A stretch of 64,000 nt of DNA from Schmidtea nova (GCA_044892505.1 CM097883.1:23188001-23252000); one strand, 5' to 3'. Positions 18,864 through 49,190 are shown, numbered from the stretch's first letter. Translations and numbers: made by a program. The notes: generated by a model not told the origin, from the letters alone.

Positions 18864-20724
18864 CTAAAATCACACATTCAAAACACATTTAAGTCATCAT
18901 CTAACATTGTAATTTCATTTTAAATATTCATTTTAAATTAGTAAGATAAAAATAATTTTAACGATGAACATTTATTGATTTTTAACAACCAACTATTATA
19001 CACAAAATTTATCTAAAAACACGGATTTTTACACATTCATTATTAATTACAAGCTTATCCTCAAGTATACCATCGCCAACTCAATTCAGGAATCGAAAAA
19101 TCTTTGATCCATCACATAATTCGGGGTATACGATGTCTGTTCATTTTAACTAAATTTTTATTATTTTCAAGATTTTCTAAATTTGCATGTTTTTGTGTCA
19201 GAGAATTTAACGAAATTTTTACTTATCCCCTATACTTAGTGTCTATCTTGCTTTATAAGTTTAATTATGTTTATTAAAATTTAATGATTTTAACATTTGA
19301 ATTCTCACCGAGGCATTGGCAACGGTATCAATATAAACTGCCTAAATATTAAGTAAATTTGATTTTATTAATATCTTTTAATTCCGAATATTTCCTATAT
19401 TTGCTAATTCTAAATTTAATTTTATTCTAGGAAACTCAACTCGAATCAGGATACCCCTGAAAACGACGCCGTTCCAACGCAAAAAAGAGAAACTATATAA
19501 ACGCCAAGCAAAAATTACACGATTTTCATTGGTTATTTCACATTATGGGATTTTCGAATCCCATAATATATTCATTGATTTTTAATTCCTATTTTTAGGA
19601 ATGGATTCCCCTTACGAAAATTCGTCGTTGGTAAGTTATTTTTAATTTTCCTGCAATTTTATAGTTATCATTTGTTTCTTTAAGCCACTTGAAAACTCTC
19701 AATTCAATGCTGATTCCGGAAATTACATCAGTCGGTTGAACAAGGTCTCCTATCAGAGTAAAAGTAATATTTCGTAATTTATTACATAATTCAGATTTAT
19801 CGTTATTTAAGTTTTAGAAGTTGCCCTGATGAAATCAATTTCTCGTCTGGGATGAAAATTAGCTATACAATGAGGGACTTAGTAAGTGAATCCGAATCTT
19901 TTCACATGCGTACTACTAGTTCCTGCACTCCTCCGGATTCGAATAGCGATTTTAGTCAATTGGATTTTTCCGTTCTTTCTCACTGTGATTTTCCTCATTT
20001 AATCATTCAATGAAACTATGATCGTGGATTTATTTATGGAATTTTTTCTACTTGTGATGTGAAGTTTCGAACCCGATTTTAGTCAGATAACTATAGTAAG
20101 TAGATGTTGTCGAAATGCTATATTTTGATAAATAAAGTGTTTACTATTTGGATGTTTTCTTTTCTTAAGCTAATAACGTTTATTATGCATTACCTTTCTA
20201 CTATTGTCATTAGCACTTTTAGTTTAGAATGATACAATTGGAAAGTGATGTTTTTAGGAGTTAGAACTGGGGAAGTTAATATTCAAACCCGAAATATTAT
20301 TGAATAATAGTCCGAGAAGCTTGACATACTTCAACCTTTTCACATGAACAGTTAGCCAATAATTTTACTAAGAGTCGGAAAAAATTCGATTTGTAATCAG
20401 TTTGTTGGTATAAGAATTTGGCTTTCTAAATAGGTAGTGAGAAAGTTAGGGTATTACATTGAAAGGTGAAAAATGGGGTAAGAAGCTGACATTGCCACCT
20501 GGATGCAGATTGCTGCTGTTAGGTATGTTTAGCAAAGGAAGGTGAACTGATCTCGATAAATATGTAGAGGATACAGATTGTTGAATACAATGATCGGGGG
20601 TGGTTTGTGAATAGACATGTTGTGTTTTATAATGCAATTTCTATATGGGATGTCGTTTTTTGTTGTGGTATGGGGGGATTTAGTGATTGTAAGTTTGTGT
20701 GTATGTATATATTATGTATATATC

Positions 20725-21326
20725 AAATGATATGTATATTACTAGGGTTTAAAATTTTTGAATCTTGCACTTTTCAAGGGTACGACCATTGTGTGCACAT
20801 CTCAATTAGCTTTTGTTTGATACACATATTATATATTTTAGACCCTTTAAAGGTTTAGCACCCACCATACACCTTCGAGGGTATGACCATCTTACCTACC
20901 TCTCAAATACCTTTCAAATGATATATGTATTATAAGGTTTGAAGGTTTTTGACCCTTTCAAGGTTCAGGACCTTCCATACACCTTTGAAAGTATGACCAT
21001 CATACTTACCTCTCAATTACCTTTTGTTTGATATATAACTTGTAAGTATTGTAAAAGGTTGAAGGTTTTTGACCCTTTGAAGGTTAATGACCCTCCATAG
21101 ACCTTCGAGGGTATGACCATTGAATAGACCTCTTCAAGACCTTTCGAATGATACCCTTGTTTGAAGGTTTGACCTTATTTGACCTTTGGAAATTTAAATT
21201 TAAAATTTGAAATGAGTCATCAATTACGTCATCAAAAAAAATCGGGGGTGGGTTACGAAAATTACGTAATCGATGACGTAATTTCCTTTGTTCTGCGATG
21301 AGTCATGCTCCTCATAACTATCTACT
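20725..21326 (+). mobile_element. Left-truncated diverged copy of the AGTAG-ended mini-element
   Basis: Aligns to 40205-40821 (GATATGTATATTACTAGGG..., 120-bp GACCCTTT repeats) and ends GTCATGCTCCTCATAACTATCTACT. Confidence 0.85.
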
Positions 21327-24232
21327 ATAAGTCTGAAATACATATCTTATTGTTATAATTTCAATGTGATTGTGTGTGTTTGTAAATTGAGAATAGTACT
21401 GCGGTAATAGGCGCTAAACAATGGATGTGATTATATGCATATTTGTGGGGATTGTCTGGATGTATGATGCTAGTGAACACTGAGATGAAATCACGTTGTG
21501 TATGTTGGTGAGTGGATGTATTGTTTAGGGTATTATTTAGCATAGAAGATCCTATTGATTGCAATGTGGTAGTGTGTGTGTTGGTAACTGAATGTATTTT
21601 GATTTGTATTAAGTATGGGTGTTACTAATGAATGAAATTGATGTAAGTTTTTGCAAAAAGGGATGCATTATGATTTTGTGATATCGTGGGGGGTATTTTA
21701 TAAGATAATATATATTTGTATACATAAAATATTTTTAGAGTTAAAATAATAATAGTAATTTTTATAATTTACAAATTTTTAATAAAATTTCTAATTTTTA
21801 TAATATACATTTTTTGAATTCAAATTTTTATATTTTAAGAATATATATATTAATCGTAAATTTTTTCTATGAAATTTCGAATTTGGAATTTTATAAAATG
21901 ATAAAATTTTTGATATAATACCAATATTTTCGATTTATAATTTTCAAGGGTTTCAATATAATTTCTGATTTACAAACTATTAGGAAAGTTTTTGGGTTGC
22001 AATTTTTCCATTATAAATTTTTCGCAAAGTAACAGAGAGTAAATTTTATTTTTATGATCAAAAACGAAATCTACATAATAATAAATTTTTATCCACGAAT
22101 TTCACAATCCAAATAAGAATTCAATCTAAAAATTCTATATACTAAAAAAAAATTAAATTAAAATAAATTAGAAAATTTTTCAAATGGTTTTCTACATCAA
22201 GTAAGGTGAATTTAGGTTTCGTTCGAACATGAATTTCCCAACCAAAGTGCGCGCAAAAATTTTCGAGACACTTCACTTAGGAACTTCTGGCTCCCGAAAA
22301 CAAGGTTACCTAGAGAAAATTATTTAGATAATGAATGAGGTTTAATTCAGATCAATCAATACTTGTCTTCATAATTCGTTTCATTTCGTGATCATTATAT
22401 CAGCTTTGAGCATTATTTCAAACGATTCTCTTTTCAATATTAGCTTTTTATTCTACTTGTGTTTTTCGGATAAGATGGTAATTATTGTGAGAGTGAAGGC
22501 GAATGACGAGTAGAATATTCTTGTACAATTAAACTATGTAAATGGAAAAAACATTGATGGATGAATTGAAATTTACGTTTTTATGTAGTATTAGGTTTTA
22601 AGTGCTCATTATGTAAAAAAAATTTAATCCAAATAAACTACACTACTATAAATTTTTGATCATTAATATAACACCTTGCCCTTGGCCAAGCCACTGTTCC
22701 CCAGTTGGGATGAAGTGATCATGGATGTTTGGGCGTATCACCTGAACTCGGAAATATGGGCTGATCGATTATGAATCGAACCAGCGATCCGCTCAGGCTA
22801 CTTCCACCCGCTCGGCACAAGGCCAGAAACAAGTTTTAAGGGGTATGGAAGAAAAAGAATTATTATTTTTATCTTTATGCAATAAATATTATTTAAAATA
22901 AATTGTAGTCTAATATGGGGATTTGTGACAGTTTTATATGGTTGAATTCAAAAATAAAAAAAAGAAATAATATTCATTTAATATTTTGTTCATTAAATAA
23001 AATAATATAACAATAATAACAATAATATAATAATCAAAATAAAATATTACCGGGTACGGGGTAATCGAAAAGGCATGATGTTCGATGACCCCGCACCGAA
23101 CAAGAAAATGATGCTTACCTATATAAATTCTTCCGGAAAATTTCGGTTTCAGAGTAAGATTTTAAAAAAAAATTTTCGACAAATTCTCTAAATTTTAAAA
23201 ATACAAAAATTTCGACTCAATTCTGATCTTTGCCATTTTGATGGCGGTATATATACCATCGATTTTGCATTACCTTCACTAGTGCAGTAAAACAAATTGT
23301 TCTAGAATGTTCTTTTTAATTTTTCTAAATTAATTCTAATGATTTTCCGAAAATTAAATCCATATTTTTTTGTAATCATTTTTTATAAAACACAAATAAT
23401 TTATTTTAATTCAAAATTTTTATTTTTGAATCGAAATTTGTTCGATTTGATTTAATTTACGATATTTCGATCAATATTAGTTCTTTTTGTTGTTAATGTG
23501 AAATTTTATGATAAAATCACAATTTTCTTCTAAATTTTGGTTAATTTTTTCTGCACTGAAGTTTTATGACACAATTCTGTTCTTTATGGGCATTTTCAAT
23601 GGGTTTTCCGCCTATTATAACTTTCAAACGTTCTTCTTTTGGCGATTTTAAATTTTTTCCGAGGTTTCAGTGTAAGGACTTGCAAATTCACAGCTAGCGC
23701 GTTCTCTACTGGTTGATGTGTTTGAGTCCACTTCACCTTTTTGACGTTTCTCACTTAACCACGTCGGTTTTTTATGAATGTTTGGGTTAAAATTGGATCT
23801 TGCGCGCTCTCTACTTACGGGGTTACTGCTTTATTAAAACAATTCGTAGTTTTTGCCCAACAGTAACAAGAGGGTCTATTCGTTTTCGTGCCTGTAGTGC
23901 CTCAGTCATTTATATATTAGTATCATATTTTTTATATATAGAAATTCAATTAAAAATTAAGAAAAATAATTAAAATATTATATCATTATATATATAAAGA
24001 TAAAAAACGATTGTTTAAATAACTAAAAAGGACATTTTTTTCTCTTTTTCAAAACTTAGAAGGAAGAAAAGACAAATCTAATTCGACGATTTCAGAACAG
24101 TTCCAAAAAATACAATTACAAAATACAATCCAAAAATCAACAATTTCAGAAGTACATAATTCGAAGAAATAACGACCATTGGACTTGAATAAATGTTTAC
24201 GTATTTTTTAGATTTATTGATTTTTATTTCAG

Positions 24233-32751: not shown

Positions 32752-33426
32752 CTAAAAATTATATTAACACAATAATAATAATAAAATATTATTTCGCCCT
32801 AAAACAATATTCACTAGGGCTTCATATTTAAACTTGGATTTCGATAATCACCTTTTATTATTATTATCCTTATATCTTTCTCATTTTACGTATGAATGTA
32901 TTCTCCGATTTCCAAGACCTTTTTACATAATGATTAGTTGTTTGAATGATTAAGTCAATTTTTAAAACCTGTATTAAATCAACTATAACTAGTAAGAATA
33001 TTTTTTTTTTCGAGTAAGAGCAAGAATTCCGAATGAATATTAGAAAGATAGAGAGTGCTATTTTAGAGAAAGGGACCAAACATCGAAATGAGCACATATC
33101 TTCTATCGATAATTTTGAACCCATAGAAATTACTCGATCAATTATAGTTCTATTAATAGCGCTAAATTTGTGTTAGAATTTTGTCCAATAGTTACATTAC
33201 TAATGGTGCTTGCGACGAGTAACTACTAATTAAACAACAGTTATATTGTTACCATAGAATTGGACCCTGCTATGGTACCAACAAATGATTGTTAAGATTT
33301 TTTGATATGCCAATCTTTCCATTACAGATTTTTATTATGATCACTAGTAGGTAATTAATGGCCCTTGAACTCACTTCAAATTCTACCCACCCCCCCACCC
33401 CCCTAGAATTTTTTTTTTCTGAGTTT

Positions 33427-33790
33427 ACGGGCCACTATGTTTTTTCTGGCCATTTTTTGTATTGGAAATTTATTGTCGGTCTTTTGTACAGATGCGTTAG
33501 CGGGCCATTATGTTTTTGGGTCAATCTTTTTTATTGGAAAATTTTTGTCGGTCTCTTGTACAGGTGCGTTGACGGGCCACTATGTTTTTCTGGTCATTAT
33601 TGTATTGGAAATTTATTGTCGGTCTCTTGTACAGGTGCGTTGACGGGCCACTATGTTTTTCTGGTCATTATTGAATTGGAAATTTATTGTCGGTCTTTTG
33701 TACAGGTGCGTTTGCGGGCCATTATGTTTTTGGGTCGATCTTTGTATTGGAAAACTTTTCTCGGTCTTTTGTACAGGGATTTTTAGCTCC
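33427..33790. repeat. Subterminal tandem repeat, about 5 x 71-73 bp (left arm)
   Basis: CGGGCCA anchor at 33428, 33501, 33573, 33644 and 33715. Confidence 0.9.
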
Positions 33791-34090
33791 GAGATTTTTC
33801 TCGGGCAAAAAGGGACTCTAGTAATGTGAGAGTTGAAATGACACAATATTTAAAATTTAATAAAAAAAAAGGGTAAAATTAATTTTTTGGAGAAATCAGA
33901 GTTGGTAAATTTTTAAATATAAAATGAAATTCTTTTTTTCACAAAATTCTTTTTTAAACCAATAAAAGTCTTAACTAATAAAAAGAAAAATTTTTAACTA
34001 ATAAAAAGAAACATTTTTAACTAATAACAATTCAAATAAATAAAAAAAAACATTTTTAACTAAATTTTATTAAAATAAATACAAATTTTA

Positions 34091-37000
34091 TTAAAATAAA
34101 TCTTCTTCATCGTCTTCTTCTGTAACTTGATTGAATTCTCTGTCATTAGTGTCTTTATAATGCCCGTATGCACAACTTTCATTTTTTCCCACCCAAACCC
34201 TTTTATCATCATTATTAGTTAGTGCAATTTTTGAATTTTTAAAGCTATATAACTGATGATTTTTTGTACCTATTCTAAATTGTGGTACACTAATCTCTGA
34301 GTTATTTAAATAACATTTTACATATGAATCGTGGTCTATTTTAGTATCCTTTAATGTTGCTCCCTTAGCTTTTGTAGTATTAGTTTTACCCAACAAGCTG
34401 TAACATTTCGGTCTAAGGAAAATCCACTCATCATATCCTTCACCCTTACTTTCATCTTTGAATTTCCCAATAACAGAATCCAATTTCTTGCTGTATAGTG
34501 GGTGATCAGTTGGATAATTTGATGTATCTAACAAGTTATCATTTTTCATTTCATTTAATAATATTTCTAATTTTAGATTTTTAATTTCTAGAAAAAACGA
34601 ATCTGTATCGCCTGCTACGATATTTATCTGACAACTATATTTGTCGCGATATTTTTGTAAATCTTTGTATTGTAATTCGTACATTCGAAGTTTTGATAAA
34701 TCAAGCACCGATTGTCCAATATAACTCGGTCTATCTAAACAAATCGAATCTGGATTTAATAAAGCAGCAACTAAATTATCGTCGATTTTAATAGATTTTT
34801 TGAAAGAAGGTTTGGATGTATATATAACTAGTTTTTTCTCCGTTGAACATAATCTTAAATTCATTCTCCTTTTAAGATTTTCCACGGTTTTGCCATACAG
34901 ACTATTATTGAGTAATTTGAAAAAGTTTTTATCTAAAGTATTAGTACTTTTCGCCCGCAATTCAGTGTTGGTGTCTATATATTTTTTGAAAATAGGATAT
35001 TGCTTAAATTTAACTGCTCTATTTATCTTTGTGACTTTAACACCAAGTCCTAAATATAATTGAAGTAATCGCCAATGAATTATATAATTATTTTTAGGGT
35101 AATGAGTCAATAGTAATTTTTCTACTTTTGAACCTCGTGGTTTCATTTTTTCTGCAGCTACCGGGAAATCATCCAAGAAATCATGAATTTCAGCAGGTAT
35201 TTCCAAATCTACCTCTAAAGTGTAACCGTAAGATATAGATTCAAGATTTAGATTAATACAGTCATGCAAAATATTATCTAAATTATCAGTCACCCAACTA
35301 AATTCTCCACAAGGTAAAGGTTCACTTAAAGCCCATCCGTAAAGATTATTTATATCGATATACAATAATTCTGTATTTTCATCGGTTTTAACGAAGTGTT
35401 TATTTACAAAAGTCAAACCTCCTCGAATTCCCCCTTCATAAAAGCTAAACATTTCATTTTCTGTTATTAATTCCATTGGTTCATCTAAAGTCATTAAAGA
35501 AGATGACCAAGACATGCCAGGAATACCGAAGTAATTCAATGGTTCTAATCTATTGTGAGCTATAGATTTGGTTCGAAATTGCTGAAAGAAATCAGCCAAA
35601 AGAAAGCAATCAAGTTTCAAGTAAGTCATCATATAATCTAAAAGAGTAACACAGTTTGTTTCTGTCCAAATCAGTTGTGCCTTTTCATATTCTTCTTTTG
35701 AAACACCTTTCCAGATTGGTGGTAACTCATAAGTATTTTCAAGTACTTCTAAACTTGTAGCAAAGCTATACGGAAAAATCCCCTTTTCAGAAACTATAGT
35801 TCCATTAAAAACCAAATTTGTCAAAGGTAAAGATTTCAACGTTTTCACTGCCTTTGCCAAAGAATCATTCACAAACTGGTATGAGTCTATAAATCTTAAA
35901 CTAATCTTGTCAACATGAGCTATCAATGAAATAAATTTTTCAGTTGTAATTGGTATACAACCCAATGACCAATTCTTGAACTTATTTAATCCATGTTTAA
36001 GAATATGGTGCATATCATATCCTTTCAAGTTATGAAAAACTATTGGTAAAGACTTGTTGATTTTTCTATTAATGTTACACGTTTGACATGCTGCACCTAA
36101 ATATTTCCCAGTGAAATGGTCATGGTCTCTTACAGGATCTACGATATTTTTCATGCAAAGGTAACAAGTGGTACCATTTTTAAATTGATCCTCTTCAATT
36201 TCAGTCAATCTATTCATTGGTTTGTTTCCATTTTTATTGTAATATGGAAGAACTTTTAATAAAGCAATATCTTCAATCGCTTTTAAAAATTCATCTACAC
36301 AATTTAGTCCAATAAATTGTTGGTAAGATTTTGTCCCATCAAAGTTATTTATTAACAAAAGCCCCGCAGAAATAGGCAAGTGTTTCTGATAATATACATC
36401 ATCCTTTGGTAAAATAGCTTCAAAGTCTGCATAAATAACAAATGGTGGGGTAACAGTTTTTGACCAATCTGAAAATTTAAGCATTTTATTTTCCGGGAAA
36501 GTGTATAATGTTGTTCCTAGTTGATTTTTTCTGCATAAAATCTCATGTTTTTCCAACGATATTTTATTTGGGAAACCATTTAAACATCTACTGCACCATT
36601 CGCTTCTTATCCTAGTAGTACAATAAATGCTTTGGTGACAATTCATTAAACGTTTTAAATTTATAATAGGTACATAATGATATTTTTCCCCTTCATTTAA
36701 TAACAATAAATTTATAGTTTTTCCTTCTATTACTTTTGACCGATGAATAATATCCAAATGAGGATGCTTTAAAATATAATCATCTTGCTCTTCATTAATT
36801 TCATTATTATAACATAGTACATTTATGATCAATCCTGGATTCTTTGCTTCGAATTTTCTGATACTATTTAATTTCATGGGCATGTCTGATATATCATATT
36901 TGAGCTCTGACAAAAAATTTGTATATTTTGATACTCTTTCTTTATTTCTAGATATTGAATCATATTTTAATATAGCTAAAATGCTATATAAAAAACATAA

Positions 37001-38312
37001 ATTATCCTTATTATCAATGTTTAATATACATCTCTTTCCTTTTAATCTTTCAGGAGTTTTTACAATGCTTCTACCTGCTAACCTACTTATATTGGATATC
37101 TTAGTTACAACAAAACTTATTTCAGTAATACGATTAAGTACCCAACTGCTACCTAATTCCGCAAATGAAGTTATCTTTTCATTCAATTTTTTAATTCCCT
37201 CTTCGAAAAATGTCTGTGTCAGAGGTTTTGCACTATTGGAAATATTGTTTCTTTTAATTTCTCCATCTTTCTCAAATTCAACACAGATACCAAATTGTAT
37301 CTTCACATAGCCTATTTCATTAATTATTTCTATTAATTTATTAATTAATGATTGTGGAAAAATAATTTGCTTTATATTTAAATCACTAGTGTTAATTTTT
37401 AAAATCCTATGCGATCCATTTAAATCACTTTCAATGACAGGGAGAGGTTCTATAACACTTCCTCCAGTTTGATAAAATCCAACGTTCCAAAAATCTTCAA
37501 TCTCTTCCACCGTTTCAATTAAAATCTTGTTTTTGTCCGTTTCGTCCGCTTCCATCGCTTCTAATAAAATCTTATCTTCAATCTCTTCTTGTAAATTTTG
37601 TGATTTCTTGATTATTTCTATGTTCAATTTAATCTTTTTATTATTAATAGGGTTTTGAGTCAAGTTTGGTCTTTTAAATAATTTTATTTTCTTAGACCTA
37701 TATTCATTTAAATGATCCTTATGTTCATCGTAAAAATTTTTATATGTAAGGGGTTGGGAAGTTTGGCATACGGGACATATATAATAGCGAATTTTATAAT
37801 AAGAGTGTCCATAATATTGCTCCATTGATCGATGACAATTATCGTTGTGGTCAGTTGAAAAGCAATAATTTGGGTATAAAGCACCTATGAATGTAAATTA
37901 ATGTTAAAAATAATAATAATATTATCAAATTATATATTTACAAATATTTTACTATATTTATTTACTAAATTAATTAAAATATAATTAAATTAATTAAAAT
38001 TAATCAATACTTACATTGGTCATTCAATACCACATCAGGTATAACTCCATTATTCATATTATTTTCGTCACTAATAATCTTAGTTTGTACGGTAGTTAGT
38101 TCAGTCATATTTACATCACCTAAAGTAAAAATTAAATAATATATTATGTTTAAGATTAAGTACCATTTTCTTCTGTATTTTCTAACAACGATTTCCCAAT
38201 TGAATTATTGATATTACCTAAATTACTACTAAATGATAATAAATTAAAAAATAAATTTACCGTTTTCTTTCCCACTTGGGTTTTCGTTCATAAAACTTGT
38301 TATCGTGTTCAT
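34091..38312 (-). CDS. polB: Protein-primed family B DNA polymerase, left copy; 1244-aa ORF, 1334 aa if spliced
   Basis: ExoI YADFE, ExoII HNLKGYD, ExoIII YLKLD, motif A DINNLYG, motif B KLLNNSLYGK, motif C GDTDS. Predicted exons 38312-38261, 38217-38164, 38119-38015 and 37884-34091. Confidence 0.95.
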
Positions 38313-38340
38313 TTTTAAAGTTTATTATTTGTAAAAGTGA

Positions 38341-38451
38341 ATAATGAATGAAAAAGTATTGTTTATATATCAAAGTTATTACACACACATAACCTTTGAC
38401 CAATAAAAATCGAGTAAGGGGTAGGAAATTTATTCTTATCAGCCAATCAGA
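38341..38451 (-). promoter_or_regulatory. Putative Pol II promoter of the left PolB
   Basis: Mirror image of 43860-43970. Confidence 0.5.
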
Positions 38452-38859
38452 ATCGAGTAAGAGGCAGTAAAGGTATTATTATCATCAGATAGAGAATTAT
38501 GACTAATTATATATTACGTTGCAGTATTTTAAAAAAACTAGAAAAGTTATTTCAACAAATTATAATACACATCAAAGTTATAAAATATTTCAATGAATTG
38601 CATGCATGTCATATGATTAAAATATATTAGACTAAATATTTCAGTAAATTACGTCTAAATTATATTACATTTCAATAATTACGTCAGTTATAAAAAATAT
38701 TTTAATTAATTTTGATAAAATACATTAGAATTGTCAATAACACACACAAAACCTTTATAATTTTCATTAGTATATGATAGAAAATTAAATTATATCTACA
38801 CATGATTAAAATAAATATTCGATAAATCTATGCTAAATAGTCGAAAAAATCCCAGTATT

Positions 38860-39950
38860 TTATTACAAAACACGTGTGCATCACAAACATATCAATATAC
38901 TTAATTTTGAATCAAGCCATTTTATAGATATTTAAATTTTATCTATATGTAATTACAATGAAAACTCACTAAAGTTATTTTAAATAACTAAAACTTACAA
39001 AATTAATTACAAAACACGTGTGTAACACGAAAAACGACAACTTTTAGATTTTGAATCAAACCATTTTATAGGAAATTAAATTTTACATATACTTTATTAC
39101 AATGAAAAGTCAATAAATTTATTTTATATACATGAAAAATGCAAAATTAATTACAAAACACGTGCGTAACACCAAAAACGACAACTTTTAGATTTTGAAT
39201 CAAGCCATTTTATAGCAATTTAAATTTTATCTATACTTTATTACAATGAAAAGTCAATAAATTTATTTTATATACACGAAAAATGCAAAATTAATTACAA
39301 AACACGTGTGTATTACAAACACACTAGCAAACTAATTTTCTAATCAAGCCATTTTATAGGAAATTAAATTGTACTTATACTTTATTACAATGAAAACTCA
39401 ATAAATTTATTTTATATACACGAAAAATGCAAAATTAATTACAAAACACGTGTGTATTACAAAATACGACAACTTTCAGATTTCTAATAAAGCAATTTTG
39501 TAGACATTTAAATTTTACACATATAATATTACAAGGAAAACTCAATAAATTTATTTTATATACACGAAAATGTAAAATTAATTACAAAACACGTGTGCAT
39601 TACAAACACACCAACAAACTAAATTTCTAATCAAGCCATTTTATAGGAAATTAAATTTTACTTATACTTTATTACAATGAAAAATACATAAAGTTACTTT
39701 ATATTGTTAAAAATTTGAAAATTCAAAATAAAACACGTGTGCATCACAAAATACGACAACTTTCAGAATTCTAATAAAGCTATTTTGTAGACAATTAAAT
39801 TTTATCTATACAATATTACAATGAAAACTCAAAAAAGTTATTTTATTTAGGTGAAATAAACAAATTTAATGACAAAACACGTGTGCACAACAATATACAC
39901 AACATTTTGAATTTTTAATTCAGCCATTTTGTAGACAATAAAATTCTGTC
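38860..39950. repeat. Tandem array of 8 x 144 bp, each unit with CACGTG (left arm)
   Basis: CACGTG at 38871, 39015, 39159, 39303, 39447, 39590, 39734 and 39878. Confidence 0.9.
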
Positions 39951-40024
39951 TATCTATTGTTACACTTAAAACCTGATCAGGCCCGAATAAAGTGTCAAAG
40001 AACCCGTCAGAAAAAAAACAGGAT

Positions 40025-40821
40025 AGTAGATAGTTATGAGAAGCATAACTCATCGAAATTACGTCATAATTACATAATATTTCGTGACCCCCCCCCCCGT
40101 GTAAATTCTTTAAATTTTTTTTTTTTTGAAAATTTTACCTTGGAACCTTTGACCATAGACCTTTGAGCGTATAACTACCATGTACATCTCTCAAATACCT
40201 TTCGAATGATATGTATATTACTAGGGTTTAAAATTTTTGAATCTTGCACTTTTCAAGGGTACGACCATTGTGTGCACATCTCAATTAGCTTTTGTTTGAT
40301 ACCCATATTATATATATTAGACCCTTTAAAGGTTGAGCACCCTCCATGTACCTTCAAGGGTATGACTACCATACTCACCCTTTAATTACCTTTTGTTTGA
40401 TGTACATATTATAAGAATTAAAAAAGGTTGAAGGTTTTTGACCCTTTCAAGGTTCAGGACACTCCATACACCTTTGAAAGTATGACCATCATACTTACCT
40501 CTCAATTACCTTTTGTTTGATATGTATATTATAAGGTTTGAAAAAAGTTGAAGGTTTTTGACCCTTTGAAGGTCAATGACCCTCCATAAACCTTCGAGGG
40601 TATGACCATTGGATAGACCTCTCCAAGACCTTTCGAATGATACCATTGTTTGAAGGTTTGACCTTATTTGACCTTTGGAAATTTAAATTTAAAATTTGAA
40701 TTTGAAATTACGTCATCGATTACGCCATCAAAAAAAAATCGGGGGGGGAGGGGGGGGGTCACGAAATATTACGTAATTATGACGTAATTTTGATGAGTCA
40801 TGCTCCTCATAACTATCTACT
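40025..40821 (+). mobile_element. 797-bp non-coding mini-element with AGTAG/CTACT ends
   Basis: About 70-bp imperfect TIRs starting AGTAGATAGTTATGAG; internal 120-bp repeats (GACCCTTT at 40320, 40440, 40560); repeated TTACGTCAT motifs. Confidence 0.8.
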
Positions 40822-41488
40822 ATCCTGTTTTTTTTCTGACGGGTTCTTTGACACTTTATTCGGGCCTGATCAGGTTTTAAGTGTAACAATAGATAGACAG
40901 AATTTTATTGTCTACAAAATGGCTGAATTAAAAATTCAAAATGTTGTGTATATTGTTGTGCACACGTGTTTTGTCATTAAATTTGTTTATTTCACCTAAA
41001 TAAAATAACTTTTTTGAGTTTTCATTGTAATATTGTATAGATAAAATTTAATTGTCTACAAAATAGCTTTATTAGAATTCTGAAAGTTGTCGTATTTTGT
41101 GATGCACACGTGTTTTATTTTGAATTTTCAAATTTTTAACAATATAAAGTAACTTTATGTATTTTTCATTGTAATAAAGTATAAGTAAAATTTAATTTCC
41201 TATAAAATGGCTTGATTAGAAATTTAGTTTGTTGGTGTGTTTGTAATGCACACGTGTTTTGTAATTAATTTTACATTTTCGTGTATATAAAATAAATTTA
41301 TTGAGTTTTCCTTGTAATATTATATGTGTAAAATTTAAATGTCTACAAAATTGCTTTATTAGAAATCTGAAAGTTGTCGTATTTTGTAATACACACGTGT
41401 TTTGTAATTAATTTTGCATTTTTCGTGTATATAAAATAAATTTATTGAGTTTTCATTGTAATAAAGTATAAGTACAATTTAATTTCCT
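40822..41488 (+). repeat. Central spacer: direct copy of 42287-42953 and inverted copy of 39358-40024
   Basis: Starts ATCCTGTTTT like 42287 (offset 1465); contains four CACGTG units; stops at AATTTCCT, where AGTAGTAG begins. Confidence 0.9.
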
Positions 41489-42286
41489 AGTAGTAGATAG
41501 TTATGAGGAGCATGACTCATCAAAATTACGTCATAATTACGTAATATTTCGTGACCCCCCCTCCCCCCCGATTTTTTTTTGATGGCGTAATCGATGACGT
41601 AATTTCAAATTCAAATTTTAAATTTAAATTTCCAAAGGTCAAATAAGGTCAAACCTTCAAACAATGGTATCATTCGAAAGGTCTTGGAGAGGTCTATCCA
41701 ATGGTCATACCCTCGAAGGTTTATGGAGGGTCATTGACCTTCAAAGGGTCAAAAACCTTCAACTTTTTTCAAACCTTATAATATACATATCAAACAAAAG
41801 GTAATTGAGAGGTAAGTATGATGGTCATACTTTCAAAGGTGTATGGAGTGTCCTGAACCTTGAAAGGGTCAAAAACCTTCAACCTTTTTTAATTCTTATA
41901 ATATGTACATCAAACAAAAGGTAATTAAAGGGTGAGTATGGTAGTCATACCCTTGAAGGTACATGGAGGGTGCTCAACCTTTAAAGGGTCTAATATATAT
42001 AATATGGGTATCAAACAAAAGCTAATTGAGATGTGCACACAATGGTCGTACCCTTGAAAAGTGCAAGATTCAAAAATTTTAAACCCTAGTAATATACATA
42101 TCATTCGAAAGGTATTTGAGAGATGTACATGGTAGTTATACGCTCAAAGGTCTATGGTCAAAGGTTCCAAGGTAAAATTTTCAAAAAAAAAAAAATTTAA
42201 AGAATTTACACGGGGGGGGGGGGTCACGAAATATTATGTAATTATGACGTAATTTCGATGAGTTATGCTTCTCATAACTATCTACT
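41489..42286 (-). mobile_element. Second, inverted copy of the mini-element
   Basis: Reverse complement of 40025-40821, differing only in homopolymer lengths as far as seen; its left end reads AGTAGTAGATAG. Confidence 0.8.
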
Positions 42287-42360
42287 ATCCTGTTTTTTTT
42301 CTGACGGGTTCTTTGACACTTTATTCGGGCCTGATCAGGTTTTAAGTGTAACAATAGATA

Positions 42361-43451
42361 GACAGAATTTTATTGTCTACAAAATGGCTGAATTAAAAAT
42401 TCAAAATGTTGTGTATATTGTTGTGCACACGTGTTTTGTCATTAAATTTGTTTATTTCACCTAAATAAAATAACTTTTTTGAGTTTTCATTGTAATATTG
42501 TATAGATAAAATTTAATTGTCTACAAAATAGCTTTATTAGAATTCTGAAAGTTGTCGTATTTTGTGATGCACACGTGTTTTATTTTGAATTTTCAAATTT
42601 TTAACAATATAAAGTAACTTTATGTATTTTTCATTGTAATAAAGTATAAGTAAAATTTAATTTCCTATAAAATGGCTTGATTAGAAATTTAGTTTGTTGG
42701 TGTGTTTGTAATGCACACGTGTTTTGTAATTAATTTTACATTTTCGTGTATATAAAATAAATTTATTGAGTTTTCCTTGTAATATTATATGTGTAAAATT
42801 TAAATGTCTACAAAATTGCTTTATTAGAAATCTGAAAGTTGTCGTATTTTGTAATACACACGTGTTTTGTAATTAATTTTGCATTTTTCGTGTATATAAA
42901 ATAAATTTATTGAGTTTTCATTGTAATAAAGTATAAGTACAATTTAATTTCCTATAAAATGGCTTGATTAGAAAATTAGTTTGCTAGTGTGTTTGTAATA
43001 CACACGTGTTTTGTAATTAATTTTGCATTTTTCGTGTATATAAAATAAATTTATTGACTTTTCATTGTAATAAAGTATAGATAAAATTTAAATTGCTATA
43101 AAATGGCTTGATTCAAAATCTAAAAGTTGTCGTTTTTGGTGTTACACACGTGTTTTGTAATTAATTTTGCATTTTTCATGTATATAAAATAAATTTATTG
43201 ACTTTTCATTGTAATAAAGTATATGTAAAATTTAATTTCCTATAAAATGGTTTGATTCAAAATCTAAAAGTTGTCGTTTTTCGTGTTACACACGTGTTTT
43301 GTAATTAATTTTGTAAGTTTTAGTTATTTAAAATAACTTTAGTGAGTTTTCATTGTAATTACATATAGATAAAATTTAAATATCTATAAAATGGCTTGAT
43401 TCAAAATTAAGTATATTGATATGTTTGTGATGCACACGTGTTTTGTAATAA
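42361..43451. repeat. Tandem array of 8 x 144 bp with CACGTG (right arm)
   Basis: Mirror of 38860-39950; first CACGTG at 42428. Confidence 0.9.
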
Positions 43452-43859
43452 AATACTGGGATTTTTTCGACTATTTAGCATAGATTTATCGAATATTTAT
43501 TTTAATCATGTGTAGATATAATTTAATTTTCTATCATATACTAATGAAAATTATAAAGGTTTTGTGTGTGTTATTGACAATTCTAATGTATTTTATCAAA
43601 ATTAATTAAAATATTTTTTATAACTGACGTAATTATTGAAATGTAATATAATTTAGACGTAATTTACTGAAATATTTAGTCTAATATATTTTAATCATAT
43701 GACATGCATGCAATTCATTGAAATATTTTATAACTTTGATGTGTATTATAATTTGTTGAAATAACTTTTCTAGTTTTTTTAAAATACTGCAACGTAATAT
43801 ATAATTAGTCATAATTCTCTATCTGATGATAATAATACCTTTACTGCCTCTTACTCGAT

Positions 43860-43970
43860 TCTGATTGGCTGATAAGAATAAATTTCCTACCCCTTACTCG
43901 ATTTTTATTGGTCAAAGGTTATGTGTGTGTAATAACTTTGATATATAAACAATACTTTTTCATTCATTAT
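43860..43970 (+). promoter_or_regulatory. Putative Pol II promoter of the right PolB
   Basis: Two inverted CCAAT boxes (ATTGG at 43864 and 43907), TATATAAA at 43942-43949 and TCATT initiator-like sequences near 43960, upstream of the ATG at 43999. Confidence 0.5.
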
Positions 43971-43998
43971 TCACTTTTACAAATAATAAACTTTAAAA

Positions 43999-46900
43999 AT
44001 GAACACGATAACAAGTTTTATGAACGAAAACCCAAGTGGGAAAGAAAACGGTAAATTTATTTTTTAATTTATTATCATTTAGTAGTAATTTAGGTAATAT
44101 CAATAATTCAATTGGGAAATCGTTGTTAGAAAATACAGAAGAAAATGGTACTTAATCTTAAACATAATATATTATTTAATTTTTACTTTAGGTGATGTAA
44201 ATATGACTGAACTAACTACCGTACAAACTAAGATTATTAGTGACGAAAATAATATGAATAATGGAGTTATACCTGATGTGGTATTGAATGACCAATGTAA
44301 GTATTGATTAATTTTAATTAATTTAATTATATTTTAATTAATTTAGTAAATAAATATAGTAAAATATTTGTAAATATATAATTTGATAATATTATTATTA
44401 TTTTTAACATTAATTTACATTCATAGGTGCTTTATACCCAAATTATTGCTTTTCAACTGACCACAACGATAATTGTCATCGATCAATGGAGCAATATTAT
44501 GGACACTCTTATTATAAAATTCGCTATTATATATGTCCCGTATGCCAAACTTCCCAACCCCTTACATATAAAAATTTTTACGATGAACATAAGGATCATT
44601 TAAATGAATATAGGTCTAAGAAAATAAAATTATTTAAAAGACCAAACTTGACTCAAAACCCTATTAATAATAAAAAGATTAAATTGAACATAGAAATAAT
44701 CAAGAAATCACAAAATTTACAAGAAGAGATTGAAGATAAGATTTTATTAGAAGCGATGGAAGCGGACGAAACGGACAAAAACAAGATTTTAATTGAAACG
44801 GTGGAAGAGATTGAAGATTTTTGGAACGTTGGATTTTATCAAACTGGAGGAAGTGTTATAGAACCTCTCCCTGTCATTGAAAGTGATTTAAATGGATCGC
44901 ATAGGATTTTAAAAATTAACACTAGTGATTTAAATATAAAGCAAATTATTTTTCCACAATCATTAATTAATAAATTAATAGAAATAATTAATGAAATAGG
45001 CTATGTGAAGATACAATTTGGTATCTGTGTTGAATTTGAGAAAGATGGAGAAATTAAAAGAAACAATATTTCCAATAGTGCAAAACCTCTGACACAGACA
45101 TTTTTCGAAGAGGGAATTAAAAAATTGAATGAAAAGATAACTTCATTTGCGGAATTAGGTAGCAGTTGGGTACTTAATCGTATTACTGAAATAAGTTTTG
45201 TTGTAACTAAGATATCCAATATAAGTAGGTTAGCAGGTAGAAGCATTGTAAAAACTCCTGAAAGATTAAAAGGAAAGAGATGTATATTAAACATTGATAA
45301 TAAGGATAATTTATGTTTTTTATATAGCATTTTAGCTATATTAAAATATGATTCAATATCTAGAAATAAAGAAAGAGTATCAAAATATACAAATTTTTTG
45401 TCAGAGCTCAAATATGATATATCAGACATGCCCATGAAATTAAATAGTATCAGAAAATTCGAAGCAAAGAATCCAGGATTGATCATAAATGTACTATGTT
45501 ATAATAATGAAATTAATGAAGAGCAAGATGATTATATTTTAAAGCATCCTCATTTGGATATTATTCATCGGTCAAAAGTAATAGAAGGAAAAACTATAAA
45601 TTTATTGTTATTAAATGAAGGGGAAAAATATCATTATGTACCTATTATAAATTTAAAACGTTTAATGAATTGTCACCAAAGCATTTATTGTACTACTAGG
45701 ATAAGAAGCGAATGGTGCAGTAGATGTTTAAATGGTTTCCCAAATAAAATATCGTTGGAAAAACATGAGATTTTATGCAGAAAAAATCAACTAGGAACAA
45801 CATTATACACTTTCCCGGAAAATAAAATGCTTAAATTTTCAGATTGGTCAAAAACTGTTACCCCACCATTTGTTATTTATGCAGACTTTGAAGCTATTTT
45901 ACCAAAGGATGATGTATATTATCAGAAACACTTGCCTATTTCTGCGGGGCTTTTGTTAATAAATAACTTTGATGGGACAAAATCTTACCAACAATTTATT
46001 GGACTAAATTGTGTAGATGAATTTTTAAAAGCGATTGAAGATATTGCTTTATTAAAAGTTCTTCCATATTACAATAAAAATGGAAACAAACCAATGAATA
46101 GATTGACTGAAATTGAAGAGGATCAATTTAAAAATGGTACCACTTGTTACCTTTGCATGAAAAATATCGTAGATCCTGTAAGAGACCATGACCATTTCAC
46201 TGGGAAATATTTAGGTGCAGCATGTCAAACGTGTAACATTAATAGAAAAATCAACAAGTCTTTACCAATAGTTTTTCATAACTTGAAAGGATATGATATG
46301 CACCATATTCTTAAACATGGATTAAATAAGTTCAAGAATTGGTCATTGGGTTGTATACCAATTACAACTGAAAAATTTATTTCATTGATAGCTCATGTTG
46401 ACAAGATTAGTTTAAGATTTATAGACTCATACCAGTTTGTGAATGATTCTTTGGCAAAGGCAGTGAAAACGTTGAAATCTTTACCTTTGACAAATTTGGT
46501 TTTTAATGGAACTATAGTTTCTGAAAAGGGGATTTTTCCGTATAGCTTTGCTACAAGTTTAGAAGTACTTGAAAATACTTATGAGTTACCACCAATCTGG
46601 AAAGGTGTTTCAAAAGAAGAATATGAAAAGGCACAACTGATTTGGACAGAAACAAACTGTGTTACTCTTTTAGATTATATGATGACTTACTTGAAACTTG
46701 ATTGCTTTCTTTTGGCTGATTTCTTTCAGCAATTTCGAACCAAATCTATAGCTCACAATAGATTAGAACCATTGAATTACTTCGGTATTCCTGGCATGTC
46801 TTGGTCATCTTCTTTAATGACTTTAGATGAACCAATAGAATTAATAACAGAAAATGAAATGTTTAGCTTTTATGAAGGGGGAATTCGAGGAGGTTTGACT

Positions 46901-48220
46901 TTTGTAAATAAACACTTCGTTAAAACCGATGAAAATACAGAATTATTGTATATCGATATAAATAATCTTTACGGATGGGCTTTAAGTGAACCTTTACCTT
47001 GTGGAGAATTTAGTTGGGTGACTGATAATTTAGATAATATTTTGCATGACTGTATTAATCTAAATCTTGAATCTATATCTTACGGTTACACTTTAGAGGT
47101 AGATTTGGAAATACCTGCTGAAATTCATGATTTCTTGGATGATTTCCCGGTAGCTGCAGAAAAAATGAAACCACGAGGTTCAAAAGTAGAAAAATTACTA
47201 TTGACTCATTACCCTAAAAATAATTATATAATTCATTGGCGATTACTTCAATTATATTTAGGACTTGGTGTTAAAGTCACAAAGATAAATAGAGCAGTTA
47301 AATTTAAGCAATATCCTATTTTCAAAAAATATATAGACACCAACACTGAATTGCGGGCGAAAAGTACTAATACTTTAGATAAAAACTTTTTCAAATTACT
47401 CAATAATAGTCTGTATGGCAAAACCGTGGAAAATCTTAAAAGGAGAATGAATTTAAGATTATGTTCAACGGAGAAAAAACTAGTTATATATACATCCAAA
47501 CCTTCTTTCAAAAAATCTATTAAAATCGACGATAATTTAGTTGCTGCTTTATTAAATCCAGATTCGATTTGTTTAGATAGACCGAGTTATATTGGACAAT
47601 CGGTGCTTGATTTATCAAAACTTCGAATGTACGAATTACAATACAAAGATTTACAAAAATATCGCGACAAATATAGTTGTCAGATAAATATCGTAGCAGG
47701 CGATACAGATTCGTTTTTTCTAGAAATTAAAAATCTAAAATTAGAAATATTATTAAATGAAATGAAAAATGATAACTTGTTAGATACATCAAATTATCCA
47801 ACTGATCACCCACTATACAGCAAGAAATTGGATTCTGTTATTGGGAAATTCAAAGATGAAAGTAAGGGTGAAGGATATGATGAGTGGATTTTCCTTAGAC
47901 CGAAATGTTACAGCTTGTTGGGTAAAACTAATACTACAAAAGCTAAGGGAGCAACATTAAAGGATACTAAAATAGACCACGATTCATATGTAAAATGTTA
48001 TTTAAATAACTCAGAGATTAGTGTACCACAATTTAGAATAGGTACAAAAAATCATCAGTTATATAGCTTTAAAAATTCAAAAATTGCACTAACTAATAAT
48101 GATGATAAAAGGGTTTGGGTGGGAAAAAATGAAAGTTGTGCATACGGGCATTATAAAGACACTAATGACAGAGAATTCAATCAAGTTACAGAAGAAGACG
48201 ATGAAGAAGATTTATTTTAA
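43999..48220 (+). CDS. polB: Protein-primed family B DNA polymerase, right copy; 1244-aa ORF, 1334 aa if spliced
   Basis: Same motifs as the left copy, with one Met/Ile difference. Predicted exons 43999-44050, 44094-44147, 44192-44296 and 44427-48220; AATAAA follows the stop. Confidence 0.95.
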
Positions 48221-48520
48221 TAAAATTTGTATTTATTTTAATAAAATTTAGTTAAAAATGTTTTTTTTTATTTATTTGAATTGTTATTAGTTAAAAATGT
48301 TTCTTTTTATTAGTTAAAAATTTTTCTTTTTATTAGTTAAGACTTTTATTGGTTTAAAAAAGAATTTTGTGAAAAAAAGAATTTCATTTTATATTTAAAA
48401 ATTTACCAACTCTGATTTCTCCAAAAAATTAATTTTACCCTTTTTTTTTATTAAATTTTAAATATTGTGTCATTTCAACTCTCACATTACTAGAGTCCCT
48501 TTTTGCCCGAGAAAAATCTC

Positions 48521-48884
48521 GGAGCTAAAAATCCCTGTACAAAAGACCGAGAAAAGTTTTCCAATACAAAGATCGACCCAAAAACATAATGGCCCGCAAA
48601 CGCACCTGTACAAAAGACCGACAATAAATTTCCAATTCAATAATGACCAGAAAAACATAGTGGCCCGTCAACGCACCTGTACAAGAGACCGACAATAAAT
48701 TTCCAATACAATAATGACCAGAAAAACATAGTGGCCCGTCAACGCACCTGTACAAGAGACCGACAAAAATTTTCCAATAAAAAAGATTGACCCAAAAACA
48801 TAATGGCCCGCTAACGCATCTGTACAAAAGACCGACAATAAATTTCCAATACAAAAAATGGCCAGAAAAAACATAGTGGCCCGT
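48521..48884. repeat. Subterminal 71-73 bp tandem repeat (right arm)
   Basis: Mirror of 33427-33790. Confidence 0.9.
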
Positions 48885-48966
48885 AAACTCAGAAAAAAAA
48901 AATTCTAGGGGGGTGGGGGGGGTGGGTAGAATTTGAAGTGAGTTCAAGGGCCATTAATTACCTACT

Positions 48967-49190
48967 ATCACTAATATTGGAAACTCACTTCGGTCGACCA
49001 TGTTCAAGAACTTGAGTACAGAGATGACGAGTGGTCTCTTCAATGTATGTGGCATCACACCTATTACGTTGAAATTGATAAACGAGATCTGGACACAATC
49101 GAAACGGAGTTTGCGACTTATTAAGAAACATATTACTCAGTTTGCAGGAATTGGAGACAATATTAAAATTTAACCCGCTCAACAGCTTAC
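48967..49190 (-). mobile_element. Penelope-like GIY-YIG remnant, continuing at about 33290-33345 on the other side of the insertion
   Basis: LVYQFQRNRCDATYIEETTRHLCTQVLEHGRPK*VSNISD continues as HNK(I)CNGKIG once the element and one TSD copy are removed. Confidence 0.75.

What the first reader, a model, noticed from the sequence alone, without database searches (positions are those of the whole stretch)
33346..48966. Giant palindromic Polinton-type element encoding only two outward-pointing PolB genes, integrated with a 6-bp TSD
Seen in sequence: AGTAG...CTACT termini, a perfect ATCACT duplication, and 33346-40821 as the reverse complement of 41492-48966 (arms of 7476 and 7475 bp, 670-bp spacer). 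The only long ORFs are two intact 1244-aa pPolBs. Established: Polintons have AG...CT ends, 6-bp TSDs made by their own retroviral-like integrase, TIRs of at most about 1 kb, and also encode integrase, ATPase, protease and capsids. Inference: the PolB end-module has been duplicated as a fold-back, so the 'TIRs' are whole genes. The molecule could self-replicate by protein priming from both ends but needs integrase (and capsid) in trans. That would make it a copy-back, defective-interfering or satellite form of a Polinton, which I do not recall being described.
Basis: partly seen in the sequence, partly recalled or inferred. Interest (0 to 1): 0.93.

Follow-up and report, generated by a model that had tools for sequence, protein, structure and literature searches.

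The report
Palindromic Maverick remnant, two polymerase genes
A 15.6-kb insertion consists of two mirror-image copies of the DNA-polymerase end of a Maverick/Polinton virus-like element, joined at a small hairpin-forming repeat; it looks real and very young, but it is a single rearranged, non-autonomous copy, and one locus cannot show whether it arose before or after integration.

Summary
Window 33346-48966 is bounded by a perfect ATCACT duplication and identical AGTAGGTAATTA... termini. Arm 33346-40822 is the reverse complement of arm 41491-48966; the arms differ by 2 substitutions plus length changes in three C/G runs. The only real genes are two intact, outward-reading 1244-aa protein-primed polymerases (PF03175, E 3e-32). 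Their closest relatives (47-59% identity) sit in full Maverick/adintovirus-like genomes with integrase, packaging ATPase and protease. No trace of those genes lies in the element.

The 668-nt "spacer" is not unique DNA. It is a perfect inverted copy of the 667 nt left of a nested 0.8-kb mini-element X (73-nt inverted ends, another copy at 20.7 kb). Both new joints at the centre lie exactly at X's terminus.

My best reading is fold-back and template-switch DNA synthesis at X, producing an inverted dimer of the polymerase end. That dimer keeps two true termini but needs integrase and capsid in trans. Formation before integration (a snap-back defective genome, about 0.4) cannot be separated here from repair of an already integrated copy (about 0.3) or from misassembly (about 0.12).

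Structural analogues are known (maize Mu killer, snap-back defective genomes). I call it a new variant of a known kind and score interest 0.55.

The parts
33340..33345 (.). Left copy of the 6-bp target-site duplication ATCACT
33346..34090 (+). Left outer terminus and non-coding end region: AGTAGGTAATTA... end, a C-rich tract about 45-60 nt in, and five 71-bp subterminal tandem repeats (33423-33777)
34091..37825 (-). Left polymerase gene, intact, 1244 aa, reading outward: N-terminal region + endonuclease-VII-like insert (aa 549-585) + protein-primed family-B polymerase
37826..38861 (.). About 1 kb of AT-rich unique non-coding DNA upstream of the left polymerase gene; no similarity to relatives' genes
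38862..40023 (.). 144-bp tandem-repeat array (B0); its last 667 nt (39357-40023) are the template of segment M
40024..40822 (+). Nested mini-element X: 73-nt inverted ends (4 mismatches), ends AGTAGATAGTTA... (10/12 identical to the outer terminus), C/G tract, internal 120-bp repeats. It folds as a long stem-loop. Its right end is the inner end of the left arm
40823..41490 (.). Central segment M: perfect reverse complement of 39357-40023 (667 nt) plus one extra base (41490).
41491..42289 (-). X', the exact reverse complement of X; its terminus is joined precisely to M+1 nt
42290..43450 (.). Mirror copy of the 144-bp array
43451..44485 (.). Mirror copy of the unique upstream non-coding DNA
44486..48220 (+). 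Right polymerase gene, intact, 1244 aa, reading outward; one residue differs from the left copy
48221..48966 (-). Right outer terminus and non-coding end region (mirror of 33346-34090; 71-bp repeats at 48534-48888)
48967..48972 (.). Right copy of the 6-bp target-site duplication ATCACT
20723..21328 (+). Second, 5'-truncated copy of mini-element X elsewhere in the window (86% identity). It ends at the same terminal nucleotides, which shows X is a dispersed repeat independent of the palindrome

Best explanation
The locus is a genuine, very young, non-autonomous derivative of a Maverick/Polinton (alpha-adintovirus-like) element. It is an inverted dimer of the 7.5-kb polymerase end.

Shown:
- Each arm consists of a true element terminus, 71-bp subterminal repeats, an intact outward-reading protein-primed polymerase gene, 1 kb of unique DNA, a 144-bp satellite, and a nested 0.8-kb hairpin-forming mini-element X whose ends resemble the Maverick ends.
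- Between the arms lies a perfect 667-nt fold-back copy of the DNA left of X.
- Both novel joints lie exactly at X's right terminus.

Inferred:
- A linear DNA that ended at X's terminus was copied back on itself.
- Its 3' end snapped back on X's 73-nt inverted repeat and copied 667 nt (segment M).
- Synthesis then switched, with one extra base, to the X-terminal end of a sister molecule and copied the whole arm out to the Maverick terminus.
- The product has two identical bona fide termini. An integrase supplied by another element could therefore insert it, which would create the ATCACT duplication.

The element encodes only the polymerase. It would depend on a helper for integration and for any packaging. 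In form it is therefore a snap-back defective genome of a Maverick. Whether it still replicates or interferes with a helper is unknown.
For: - Palindrome, termini and duplication.
- Two substitutions between the arms show two physically distinct copies.
- The polymerase is intact and of Maverick type. Relatives lie in full genomes with rve integrase, ATPase, C48 protease, Bcl-2 and TBP. Such genomes are described as Alpha adintoviruses in PMC8502044.
- An outward-reading PolB next to the TIR occurs in relatives (L039, L017, L028, L003, L005).
- No other element gene is present.
- X is a dispersed repeat with its own inverted ends and a strong stem-loop (z -11.6).
- X's terminal 12-mer matches the outer terminus at 10/12. 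The chance rate is about 11 such hits per 128 kb.
- M is a perfect fold-back copy, and both new joints are terminus-precise. X' is an exact reverse complement of X, including the variants in its ends, as copying would give and recombination within the ends would not.
Against: - There is only one copy. No second palindrome with a different duplication and no same-family helper could be sought, because the host genome is absent from the searchable collections.
- The only other Maverick material in the window is old, decayed and diverged.
- The same DNA-synthesis steps could have happened during repair of an already integrated full-length copy, which would also keep the duplication.
- No reads are available to verify the assembly.
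- The similarity between X's ends and the outer ends is short (12 nt) and was noticed post hoc. Beyond it, only the C tract aligns.
Confidence: 0.4

Rival explanations
1. In-situ conversion. A full-length element, already carrying the nested X, integrated normally and made the ATCACT duplication. Later a break inside it was repaired by fold-back priming at X's inverted ends and break-induced copying of the polymerase arm, with template switches. Repair finished by annealing in the far terminal repeat. The integrase/capsid half was replaced by a mirror copy of the polymerase half.
For: - The duplication and both termini are equally expected under this model.
- A host-type dispersed repeat (X) inside the element shows its ancestor had resided in a chromosome.
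- The complex centre (M, one extra base, two switches) is typical of error-prone break-induced synthesis.
- Polinton-mediated inversions, and polymerase-end remnants with a TIR but no integrase, are documented in C. elegans (bioRxiv 10.1101/2024.01.15.575659).
Against: - It needs loss or resection of about 10 kb and a precise finish in the far TIR.
- It needs a free end exactly at X's terminus twice.
- No remnant of the replaced half is left.
Confidence: 0.3
2. Assembly artefact. The assembler threaded a wrong path through repeats (TIRs, 144-bp array, X copies) or used fold-back chimeric long reads, so that one polymerase end was written twice in mirror image.
For: - The arms are almost identical, and most differences are homopolymer lengths, as polishing noise would give.
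- The window contains scaffold gaps elsewhere.
- No reads can be inspected.
Against: - Two true substitutions separate the arms, one of them changing a residue.
- The palindrome is internal, with unique flanks on both sides and a matching 6-bp duplication.
- The centre is asymmetric, with a loop and terminus-precise joints rather than a loop-less turn at a random point.
- There is no N inside the element.
Confidence: 0.12
3. Whatever its origin, its present effect is that of a silencing locus, as with maize Mu killer. A transcript entering from either flank would fold into a roughly 7.5-kb double-stranded stem covering the whole polymerase gene. That stem would feed small-RNA pathways that repress related Mavericks.
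For: [quoted passage not shown]
- Inverted duplications made by alternative transposition trigger Ac/Ds silencing (bioRxiv 10.1101/2020.01.07.897926).
- The arms are 99.9% complementary.
Against: - No expression or small-RNA data are available.
- The two polymerase genes diverge from the centre, so their own transcripts do not cross the axis.
- The intact reading frames are not needed for such a role and simply reflect youth.
Confidence: 0.2
4. The family naturally has multi-kilobase terminal repeats that contain the polymerase gene, and this copy has merely lost its unique middle by an internal deletion.
For: Polymerase orientation relative to neighbouring genes varies among relatives. This hints that the polymerase module has been inverted in evolution.
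Against: - None of 42 related loci has two polymerase genes as an inverted repeat.
- Their detected TIRs are 237-552 bp, and one locus has a 1.18-kb inverted repeat, one arm of it internal.
- Published ranges are 46-1500 bp.
Confidence: 0.08
5. Two independent head-to-head insertions of a 7.5-kb polymerase-only element.
For: Each arm is bounded by AGTAG...CTACT-type ends: the outer terminus and X's right terminus.
Against: - The sequences flanking each arm are not duplicated. Only the outermost flanks match.
- The arms differ by 0.03%.
- M is a copy of arm sequence, not of host DNA.
Confidence: 0.02

Closest known systems
Mavericks/Polintons (adintovirus-like, Alpha PolB class) of animals
   Same: The protein-primed PolB hits PF03175 and is 47-59% identical to polymerases of full elements. 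The ends are AG...CT (AGTAG), the target-site duplication is 6 bp, there are subterminal repeats, and the size is 15.6 kb.
   Different: There is no integrase, ATPase, protease or capsid gene. The 'TIRs' are 7.5 kb instead of 0.05-1.5 kb and contain the polymerase gene. The centre is repeats plus a nested mini-element.
Snap-back / copy-back defective viral genomes (review PMC13506859). From memory: the inverted left-end DNA in incomplete adenovirus particles (Daniell 1976, cited in PMC5033970; the paper itself was not held) and the hairpin derivatives of the yeast linear killer plasmid pGKL
   Same: One genome end is duplicated in mirror image, both termini are identical, essential genes are lost, and the replicon is protein-primed.
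   Different: Those are extrachromosomal molecules seen in infected cells or particles. This one is known only as an integrated copy, and neither replication nor interference has been observed.
Maize Mu killer (PMC3440606)
   Same: [quoted passage not shown]
   Different: It belongs to a different superfamily (Mutator, cut-and-paste) and holds only part of the gene. Its silencing function is demonstrated, whereas here it is only a possibility.
Inverted duplications from Ac/Ds alternative transposition (bioRxiv 10.1101/2020.01.07.897926)
   Same: Transposon-end-precise joints create inverted duplications.
   Different: Those arise through hAT transposase chemistry on sister chromatids. Here the joints suit copy-back DNA synthesis at least as well.
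C. elegans polymerase-end + TIR remnants without integrase, and Polinton-mediated inversions (bioRxiv 10.1101/2024.01.15.575659)
   Same: Partial Polinton copies that keep the pPolB end and a TIR and lack integrase; rearrangements driven by TIRs.
   Different: Those are single ends or direct/inverted TIR pairs around host genes, not a mirror dimer with two intact polymerase genes.

Membership tests
Polinton/Maverick | [quoted passage not shown] | tested here: met
   PF03175 at E 3.2e-32, 112.5 bits against a cutoff of 25.8, for residues 441-1244. All invariant columns of 23 relatives are kept. 16 of 23 relatives hit PF03175.
Polinton/Maverick | Retrovirus-like (rve) integrase in the element | tested here: not met
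   tblastn with the integrases and all other proteins of L001-L005 finds nothing in 33346-48966 outside the polymerase genes at E<=1. There is no ORF over 69 aa in the centre.
Polinton/Maverick | Morphogenesis module (capsid proteins, packaging ATPase, adenain-type protease) | tested here: not met
   Same searches. Relatives carry Pox_A32-like ATPase and Peptidase_C48.
Polinton/Maverick | Terminal inverted repeats with 5'-AG...CT-3' ends and a 6-bp target-site duplication | tested here: met
   AGTAGG...CCTACT ends and ATCACT on both sides. Published end motifs and duplications are in PMC8097293.
Polinton/Maverick | TIR length 0.05-1.5 kb, without genes | tested here: not met
   The arms are 7.5 kb and include the polymerase gene. 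Relatives' TIRs are 237-552 bp, and one locus has a 1.18-kb inverted repeat with an internal arm.
Alpha adintovirus-type PolB (OTU + PF03175; PMC8502044) | N-terminal OTU-like domain | tested here: inconclusive
   A model of residues 101-450 (pLDDT 81.7) gave no PDB match at E<=0.001 and no OTU among the top hits. Pfam finds nothing in residues 1-440. Invariant Cys and His residues exist in the region.
Alpha adintovirus-type PolB (OTU + PF03175; PMC8502044) | Closest relatives reside in genomes with integrase, FtsK/A32-type ATPase, adenain, and accessory Bcl-2/TBP-type genes | tested here: met
   L001, L002, L003, L005, L006 and L009.
Snap-back defective genome of a protein-primed replicon | Mirror duplication of one genome end with loss of essential genes | tested here: met
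Snap-back defective genome of a protein-primed replicon | Exists or existed as a free replicating molecule dependent on, and interfering with, a helper | not testable with these tools
   There are no reads and no host genome, and only decayed, diverged relics in the window.
MITE-like non-autonomous element (for X) | Short, non-coding, with terminal inverted repeats and dispersed copies | tested here: met
   799 bp, 73-nt ends with 4 mismatches, and a second copy at 20723-21328 ending at the same nucleotides.
MITE-like non-autonomous element (for X) | Own target-site duplication | tested here: inconclusive
   In the palindrome its flanks are mirror images, not direct repeats. The other copy lacks its left end.
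Fold-back chimeric assembly artefact | Identical arms, a loop-less turn at an arbitrary point, usually at a contig end | tested here: not met
   There are two substitutions between the arms, a structured 668-nt centre with terminus-precise joints, and unique flanks on both sides. Read-level support is not testable here.

The most novel reading that the evidence does not exclude
The locus is an integrated fossil of a snap-back defective genome. It would then be sequence-level evidence that animal Mavericks replicate as free linear protein-primed molecules, that a nested mini-Maverick terminus can serve as an internal end or origin defining a 7.5-kb polymerase-only sub-genome, and that such polymerase-only dimers are inserted by integrase supplied in trans, i.e. 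a satellite-like class of Maverick derivatives.
Probability: 0.3. Interest if true: 0.8.

Novelty: new variant of a known kind. Interest (0 to 1): 0.55.

Why it matters
The replication cycle proposed for Mavericks/Polintons (excision, protein-primed copying as a linear molecule, re-integration) rests almost wholly on gene content. A copy whose architecture is best explained by copy-back synthesis at a DNA end, and which still carries two perfect termini and a fresh target-site duplication, would be a rare structural trace of that cycle. It would also be a trace of defective or satellite forms.

Independently of origin, a 7.5-kb perfect inverted repeat of the polymerase gene could produce double-stranded RNA against the whole family, as Mu killer does in maize. 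Both ideas can be checked with descriptive data (reads, copy census, small RNAs) from the host species.

If the locus is a one-off repair product or a misassembly, it is only a curiosity.

Tried and rejected
- Pfam on the whole 1244-aa protein returned only Endonuclease_7. Splitting the protein recovered PF03175.
- phmmer against PDB found nothing. The family profile hit only the HNH enzyme Hpy99I at E 0.006, which fits the endonuclease-VII-like insert.
- Foldseek of the N-terminal model gave no significant match, so the published OTU likeness was not reproduced.
- The exact protein is not on record. The best homologue is 57-59% identical, so the source genome is not in the collections.
- A search with a hAT-like ORF to identify the host gave only 28-35% hits without names. 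The host stays unknown.
- The G+C content (about 29%) and the repeat content are not human-like. I do not take the contig for human.
- The terminal 19-mer has 0 hits in IMG/VR. It has one hit in the metagenome set, in a 60% G+C contig with no other similarity, which I take as chance.
- blastn of the non-coding parts against relatives' loci gave only low-complexity AT-rich noise.
- The flanks have no other copy in the window, so an empty site could not be inferred. The two flanks were compared apart and never joined.
- Rfam and tRNA scans of the element found nothing.
- Termini of distant relatives' contigs do not share AGTAG.
- L002's two head-to-head polymerases turned out to be diverged copies, one of them truncated, not a palindrome.
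- Daniell 1976 could not be read. What I say of it is from memory.
- Literature searches for a palindromic or two-polymerase Polinton found none. The library is incomplete.
- N stretches were left as they are.

Full report
**1. Observation**

The window is AT-rich (about 29% G+C) and has four N runs, none of them inside the feature.

At 33340-33345 and 48967-48972 the same hexamer ATCACT directly flanks AGTAGGTAATTAATGGCCC and its reverse complement. That 19-mer occurs nowhere else in the window (0 expected). By my own calculation, a 6-bp match at this base composition has a chance of about 6.5e-4.

blastn of the element against itself pairs 33345-40822 with 48967-41491 at 99.906% over 7480 columns (seeds). 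A base-by-base comparison gives two transitions, one of them changing a Met/Ile residue of the polymerase. It also gives length differences in three C/G homopolymer tracts.

The only substantial ORFs are 34091-37825 (-) and 44486-48220 (+), each 1244 aa and both reading outward. The 140-161-aa ORFs lie antisense within them or in the 71-bp subterminal repeats.

**2. The gene**

The whole protein hit only Endonuclease_7 in Pfam. Residues 441-1244 alone hit PF03175 (DNA polymerase type B, organellar and viral) at 3.2e-32.

There are 2160 homologues at E<=0.001, the best at 57-59% identity. In a 23-sequence alignment the window protein keeps every one of more than 100 invariant columns, including the acidic and Lys/Asn/Gly positions in the exonuclease and polymerase parts. 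16 of 23 members hit PF03175 and all 23 hit the endonuclease-VII-like insert. The gene looks fully intact.

PMC8502044 calls the class 'OTU + pfam03175' Alpha adintovirus PolB. I could not reproduce the OTU likeness. A good model of residues 101-450 (pLDDT 81.7) had no significant PDB neighbour.

**3. Relatives and their anatomy**

Contigs carrying the nearest polymerases are full Maverick/adintovirus-like genomes or integrated copies. They encode rve integrase, Pox_A32-like ATPase, Peptidase_C48, Adeno_PX, Bcl-2 and TBP (L001-L009).

In L003, L005, L017, L028 and L039 the polymerase is the last gene and reads outward. It ends 19-380 nt from a TIR or contig end in L005, L017, L028 and L039, as in the window. 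In others it is convergent with the capsid block.

Across 42 related loci, none has two polymerase genes as an inverted repeat. Detected TIRs are 237-552 bp, and one locus has a 1.18-kb inverted repeat with an internal arm. Short-read assemblies could not have resolved a palindrome, so this absence is weak evidence. Published TIRs are 46-1447 bp and 100-1500 bp, with 6-bp duplications and AG- or AGT-type end motifs.

**4. What is missing**

tblastn with every protein of L001-L005 (integrase, ATPase, protease, capsid candidates, accessory genes) finds nothing in 33346-48966 outside the polymerase genes, even at E<=1. The 6.66 kb between the two start codons has no ORF above 69 aa. It has no Rfam or tRNA match.

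**5.

- Each arm, going inward from the polymerase start, has about 1 kb of unique AT-rich DNA, then a 144-bp tandem array (38862-40023), then a 799-bp unit X (40024-40822).
- X is a dispersed repeat. An 86% copy lies at 20723-21328 and stops at the same terminal nucleotides.
- X has 73-nt inverted ends with 4 mismatches, internal 120-bp repeats, and a long terminal stem when folded as single-stranded DNA (z -11.6).
- X's ends read AGTAGATAGTTA, 10/12 identical to the outer terminus AGTAGGTAATTA. About 11 such near-matches per 128 kb are expected by chance. Like the outer end, X carries a C tract some 45-75 nt in. Beyond that the two ends do not align significantly.
- I therefore call X a MITE-like mini-element, possibly derived from Maverick ends. 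That last point is only suggestive.
- The inner end of the left arm (40822) is exactly X's right terminus.
- The 668 nt that follow are a perfect reverse complement of the 667 nt left of X (0 mismatches) plus one extra base. Then comes the exact reverse complement of the whole arm, starting at X's terminus.
- So there are two novel joints, and both lie at the last nucleotide of X. X' reproduces X's end variants exactly, as copying would and as recombination inside the ends would not.

**6. Mechanism (inference)**

The simplest series of events is DNA synthesis that reached a free end at X's terminus. The end snapped back on X's inverted repeat and copied 667 nt. Synthesis then switched to the X-terminal end of a sister molecule and copied it to the Maverick terminus. 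This yields precisely arm-M-arm'.

A free end at a terminus-like sequence is expected for a linear protein-primed replicon. It is also expected for a transposon end cleaved in the chromosome. Hence two versions remain:
- (a) Formation on a free linear molecule, followed by insertion by an integrase in trans. I give it 0.4.
- (b) The same synthesis during repair of a break in an integrated full-length copy, completed by annealing in the far TIR. I give it 0.3.

The duplication, the termini and the youth of the arms fit both. X, being a host-type dispersed repeat, shows only that an ancestor had lived in a chromosome.

I rate misassembly at 0.12. The arms differ by true substitutions, the palindrome is internal between unique flanks with a matching duplication, and the turn is structured rather than loop-less. 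Without reads it cannot be excluded.

Two independent insertions are contradicted by the flanks. A family with naturally gene-bearing TIRs has no support among relatives.

**7. Function**

Shown: two intact polymerase genes and nothing else.

Inferred: the element cannot integrate or form particles by itself. In form it equals a snap-back defective genome (definition in PMC13506859). From memory, the adenovirus and killer-plasmid precedents are of this kind. PMC5033970 confirms only that incomplete adenovirus particles carry left-end DNA.

[quoted passage not shown] It also resembles the inverted duplications made by Ac/Ds alternative transposition. Which of these effects, if any, operates here is open.

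**8. Context**

The window is a transposon-rich stretch. It contains:
- a decayed polymerase C-terminal relic at 30541-31516 (5'-truncated, at least one frameshift, 4-6 in-frame stops);
- a decayed relic cluster of another Maverick-like copy at 53952-56851 (fragments, 1-3 stops each);
- mariner, hAT-like and RT-like ORFs.

None of these is close enough (54-60% aa) to be a helper of the same family. The host species could not be identified. The contig is not human-like.

**9. Novelty and score**

I found no description of a palindromic, two-polymerase Maverick/Polinton derivative. Polymerase-end remnants with a TIR and no integrase are reported in C. elegans. Because close structural analogues exist in other systems, and because only one unverified copy is in hand, I classify it as a new variant of a known kind, with interest 0.55. 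The most novel reading still open, an integrated fossil of a snap-back defective Maverick genome that used a mini-element terminus as an internal end, has about 0.3 probability and would merit about 0.8.

- The flanks and the pieces were compared apart.
- N runs were left untouched.
- Consensus lines printed by the alignment tools were not used.
- One functional test was left out and is listed under referred steps.

Noticed in passing
window 30541-31516 (-): Decayed C-terminal relic of a second, diverged Maverick-type polymerase gene (54-60% aa to relatives). It is 5'-truncated, with at least one frameshift and 4-6 in-frame stops. It lies 1.8 kb left of the palindrome, on the same strand as the left polymerase gene.
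   Followed up: partly
window 53952-56851 (-): Cluster of decayed fragments of another Maverick-like copy: the C-terminal part of the 407-409-aa protein (53-61% aa), the 87-aa and 159-aa homologues, a 50-aa polymerase piece and a 110-aa homologue. Each has 0-3 stops. The gene order is as in L003.
   Followed up: partly
window 20723-21328 (+): 5'-truncated copy (86%) of the mini-element X that sits at the palindrome's axis. It ends at the same terminal nucleotides.
   Followed up: yes
window 27737-28807 (+), next to N run 28877-29008: Mariner/Tc1-type transposase in two ORFs (HTH domains, then the Transposase_1/DDE_3 part). It runs up to an assembly gap.
   Followed up: no
window 9908-10597 (+) and 10911-11270 (+): By eye, a hAT-like transposase fragment and a reverse-transcriptase-like ORF. 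The hAT-like ORF has only 28-35% relatives in the protein collection, so the host genome is not represented there.
   Followed up: partly
L002:3-6315 (ena:ERZ25039515:contig_28610): Two diverged polymerase genes lie head-to-head about 670 bp apart, the left one lacking its first roughly 290 codons. There is no DNA-level inverted repeat, so this is probably a nested or abutting insertion, not a palindrome.
   Followed up: partly
L001, L006, L009 versus L003 and window 53952-56851: The orientation of the polymerase gene relative to the neighbouring 159-aa and 407-aa genes differs among close relatives (convergent versus co-linear). The polymerase module has therefore been inverted at least once in this clade.
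   Followed up: no
window 44486-48220 (protein): Pfam misses PF03175 when the whole 1244-aa protein is the query but scores it at 3e-32 when residues 441-1244 are given alone. This is a search-tool effect worth knowing for this family.
   Followed up: yes
window 6274-6285 (-): AGTAGGTTATTA, one mismatch from the element's terminal 12-mer. It could be the end of another Maverick-type relic or chance (11 near-matches expected per window at up to 2 mismatches).
   Followed up: no
L043 (JAABUL010000103.1): The only exact match to the terminal 19-mer in the metagenome collection. The contig has 60% G+C and no other similarity to the window; I judge it a chance match.
   Followed up: yes
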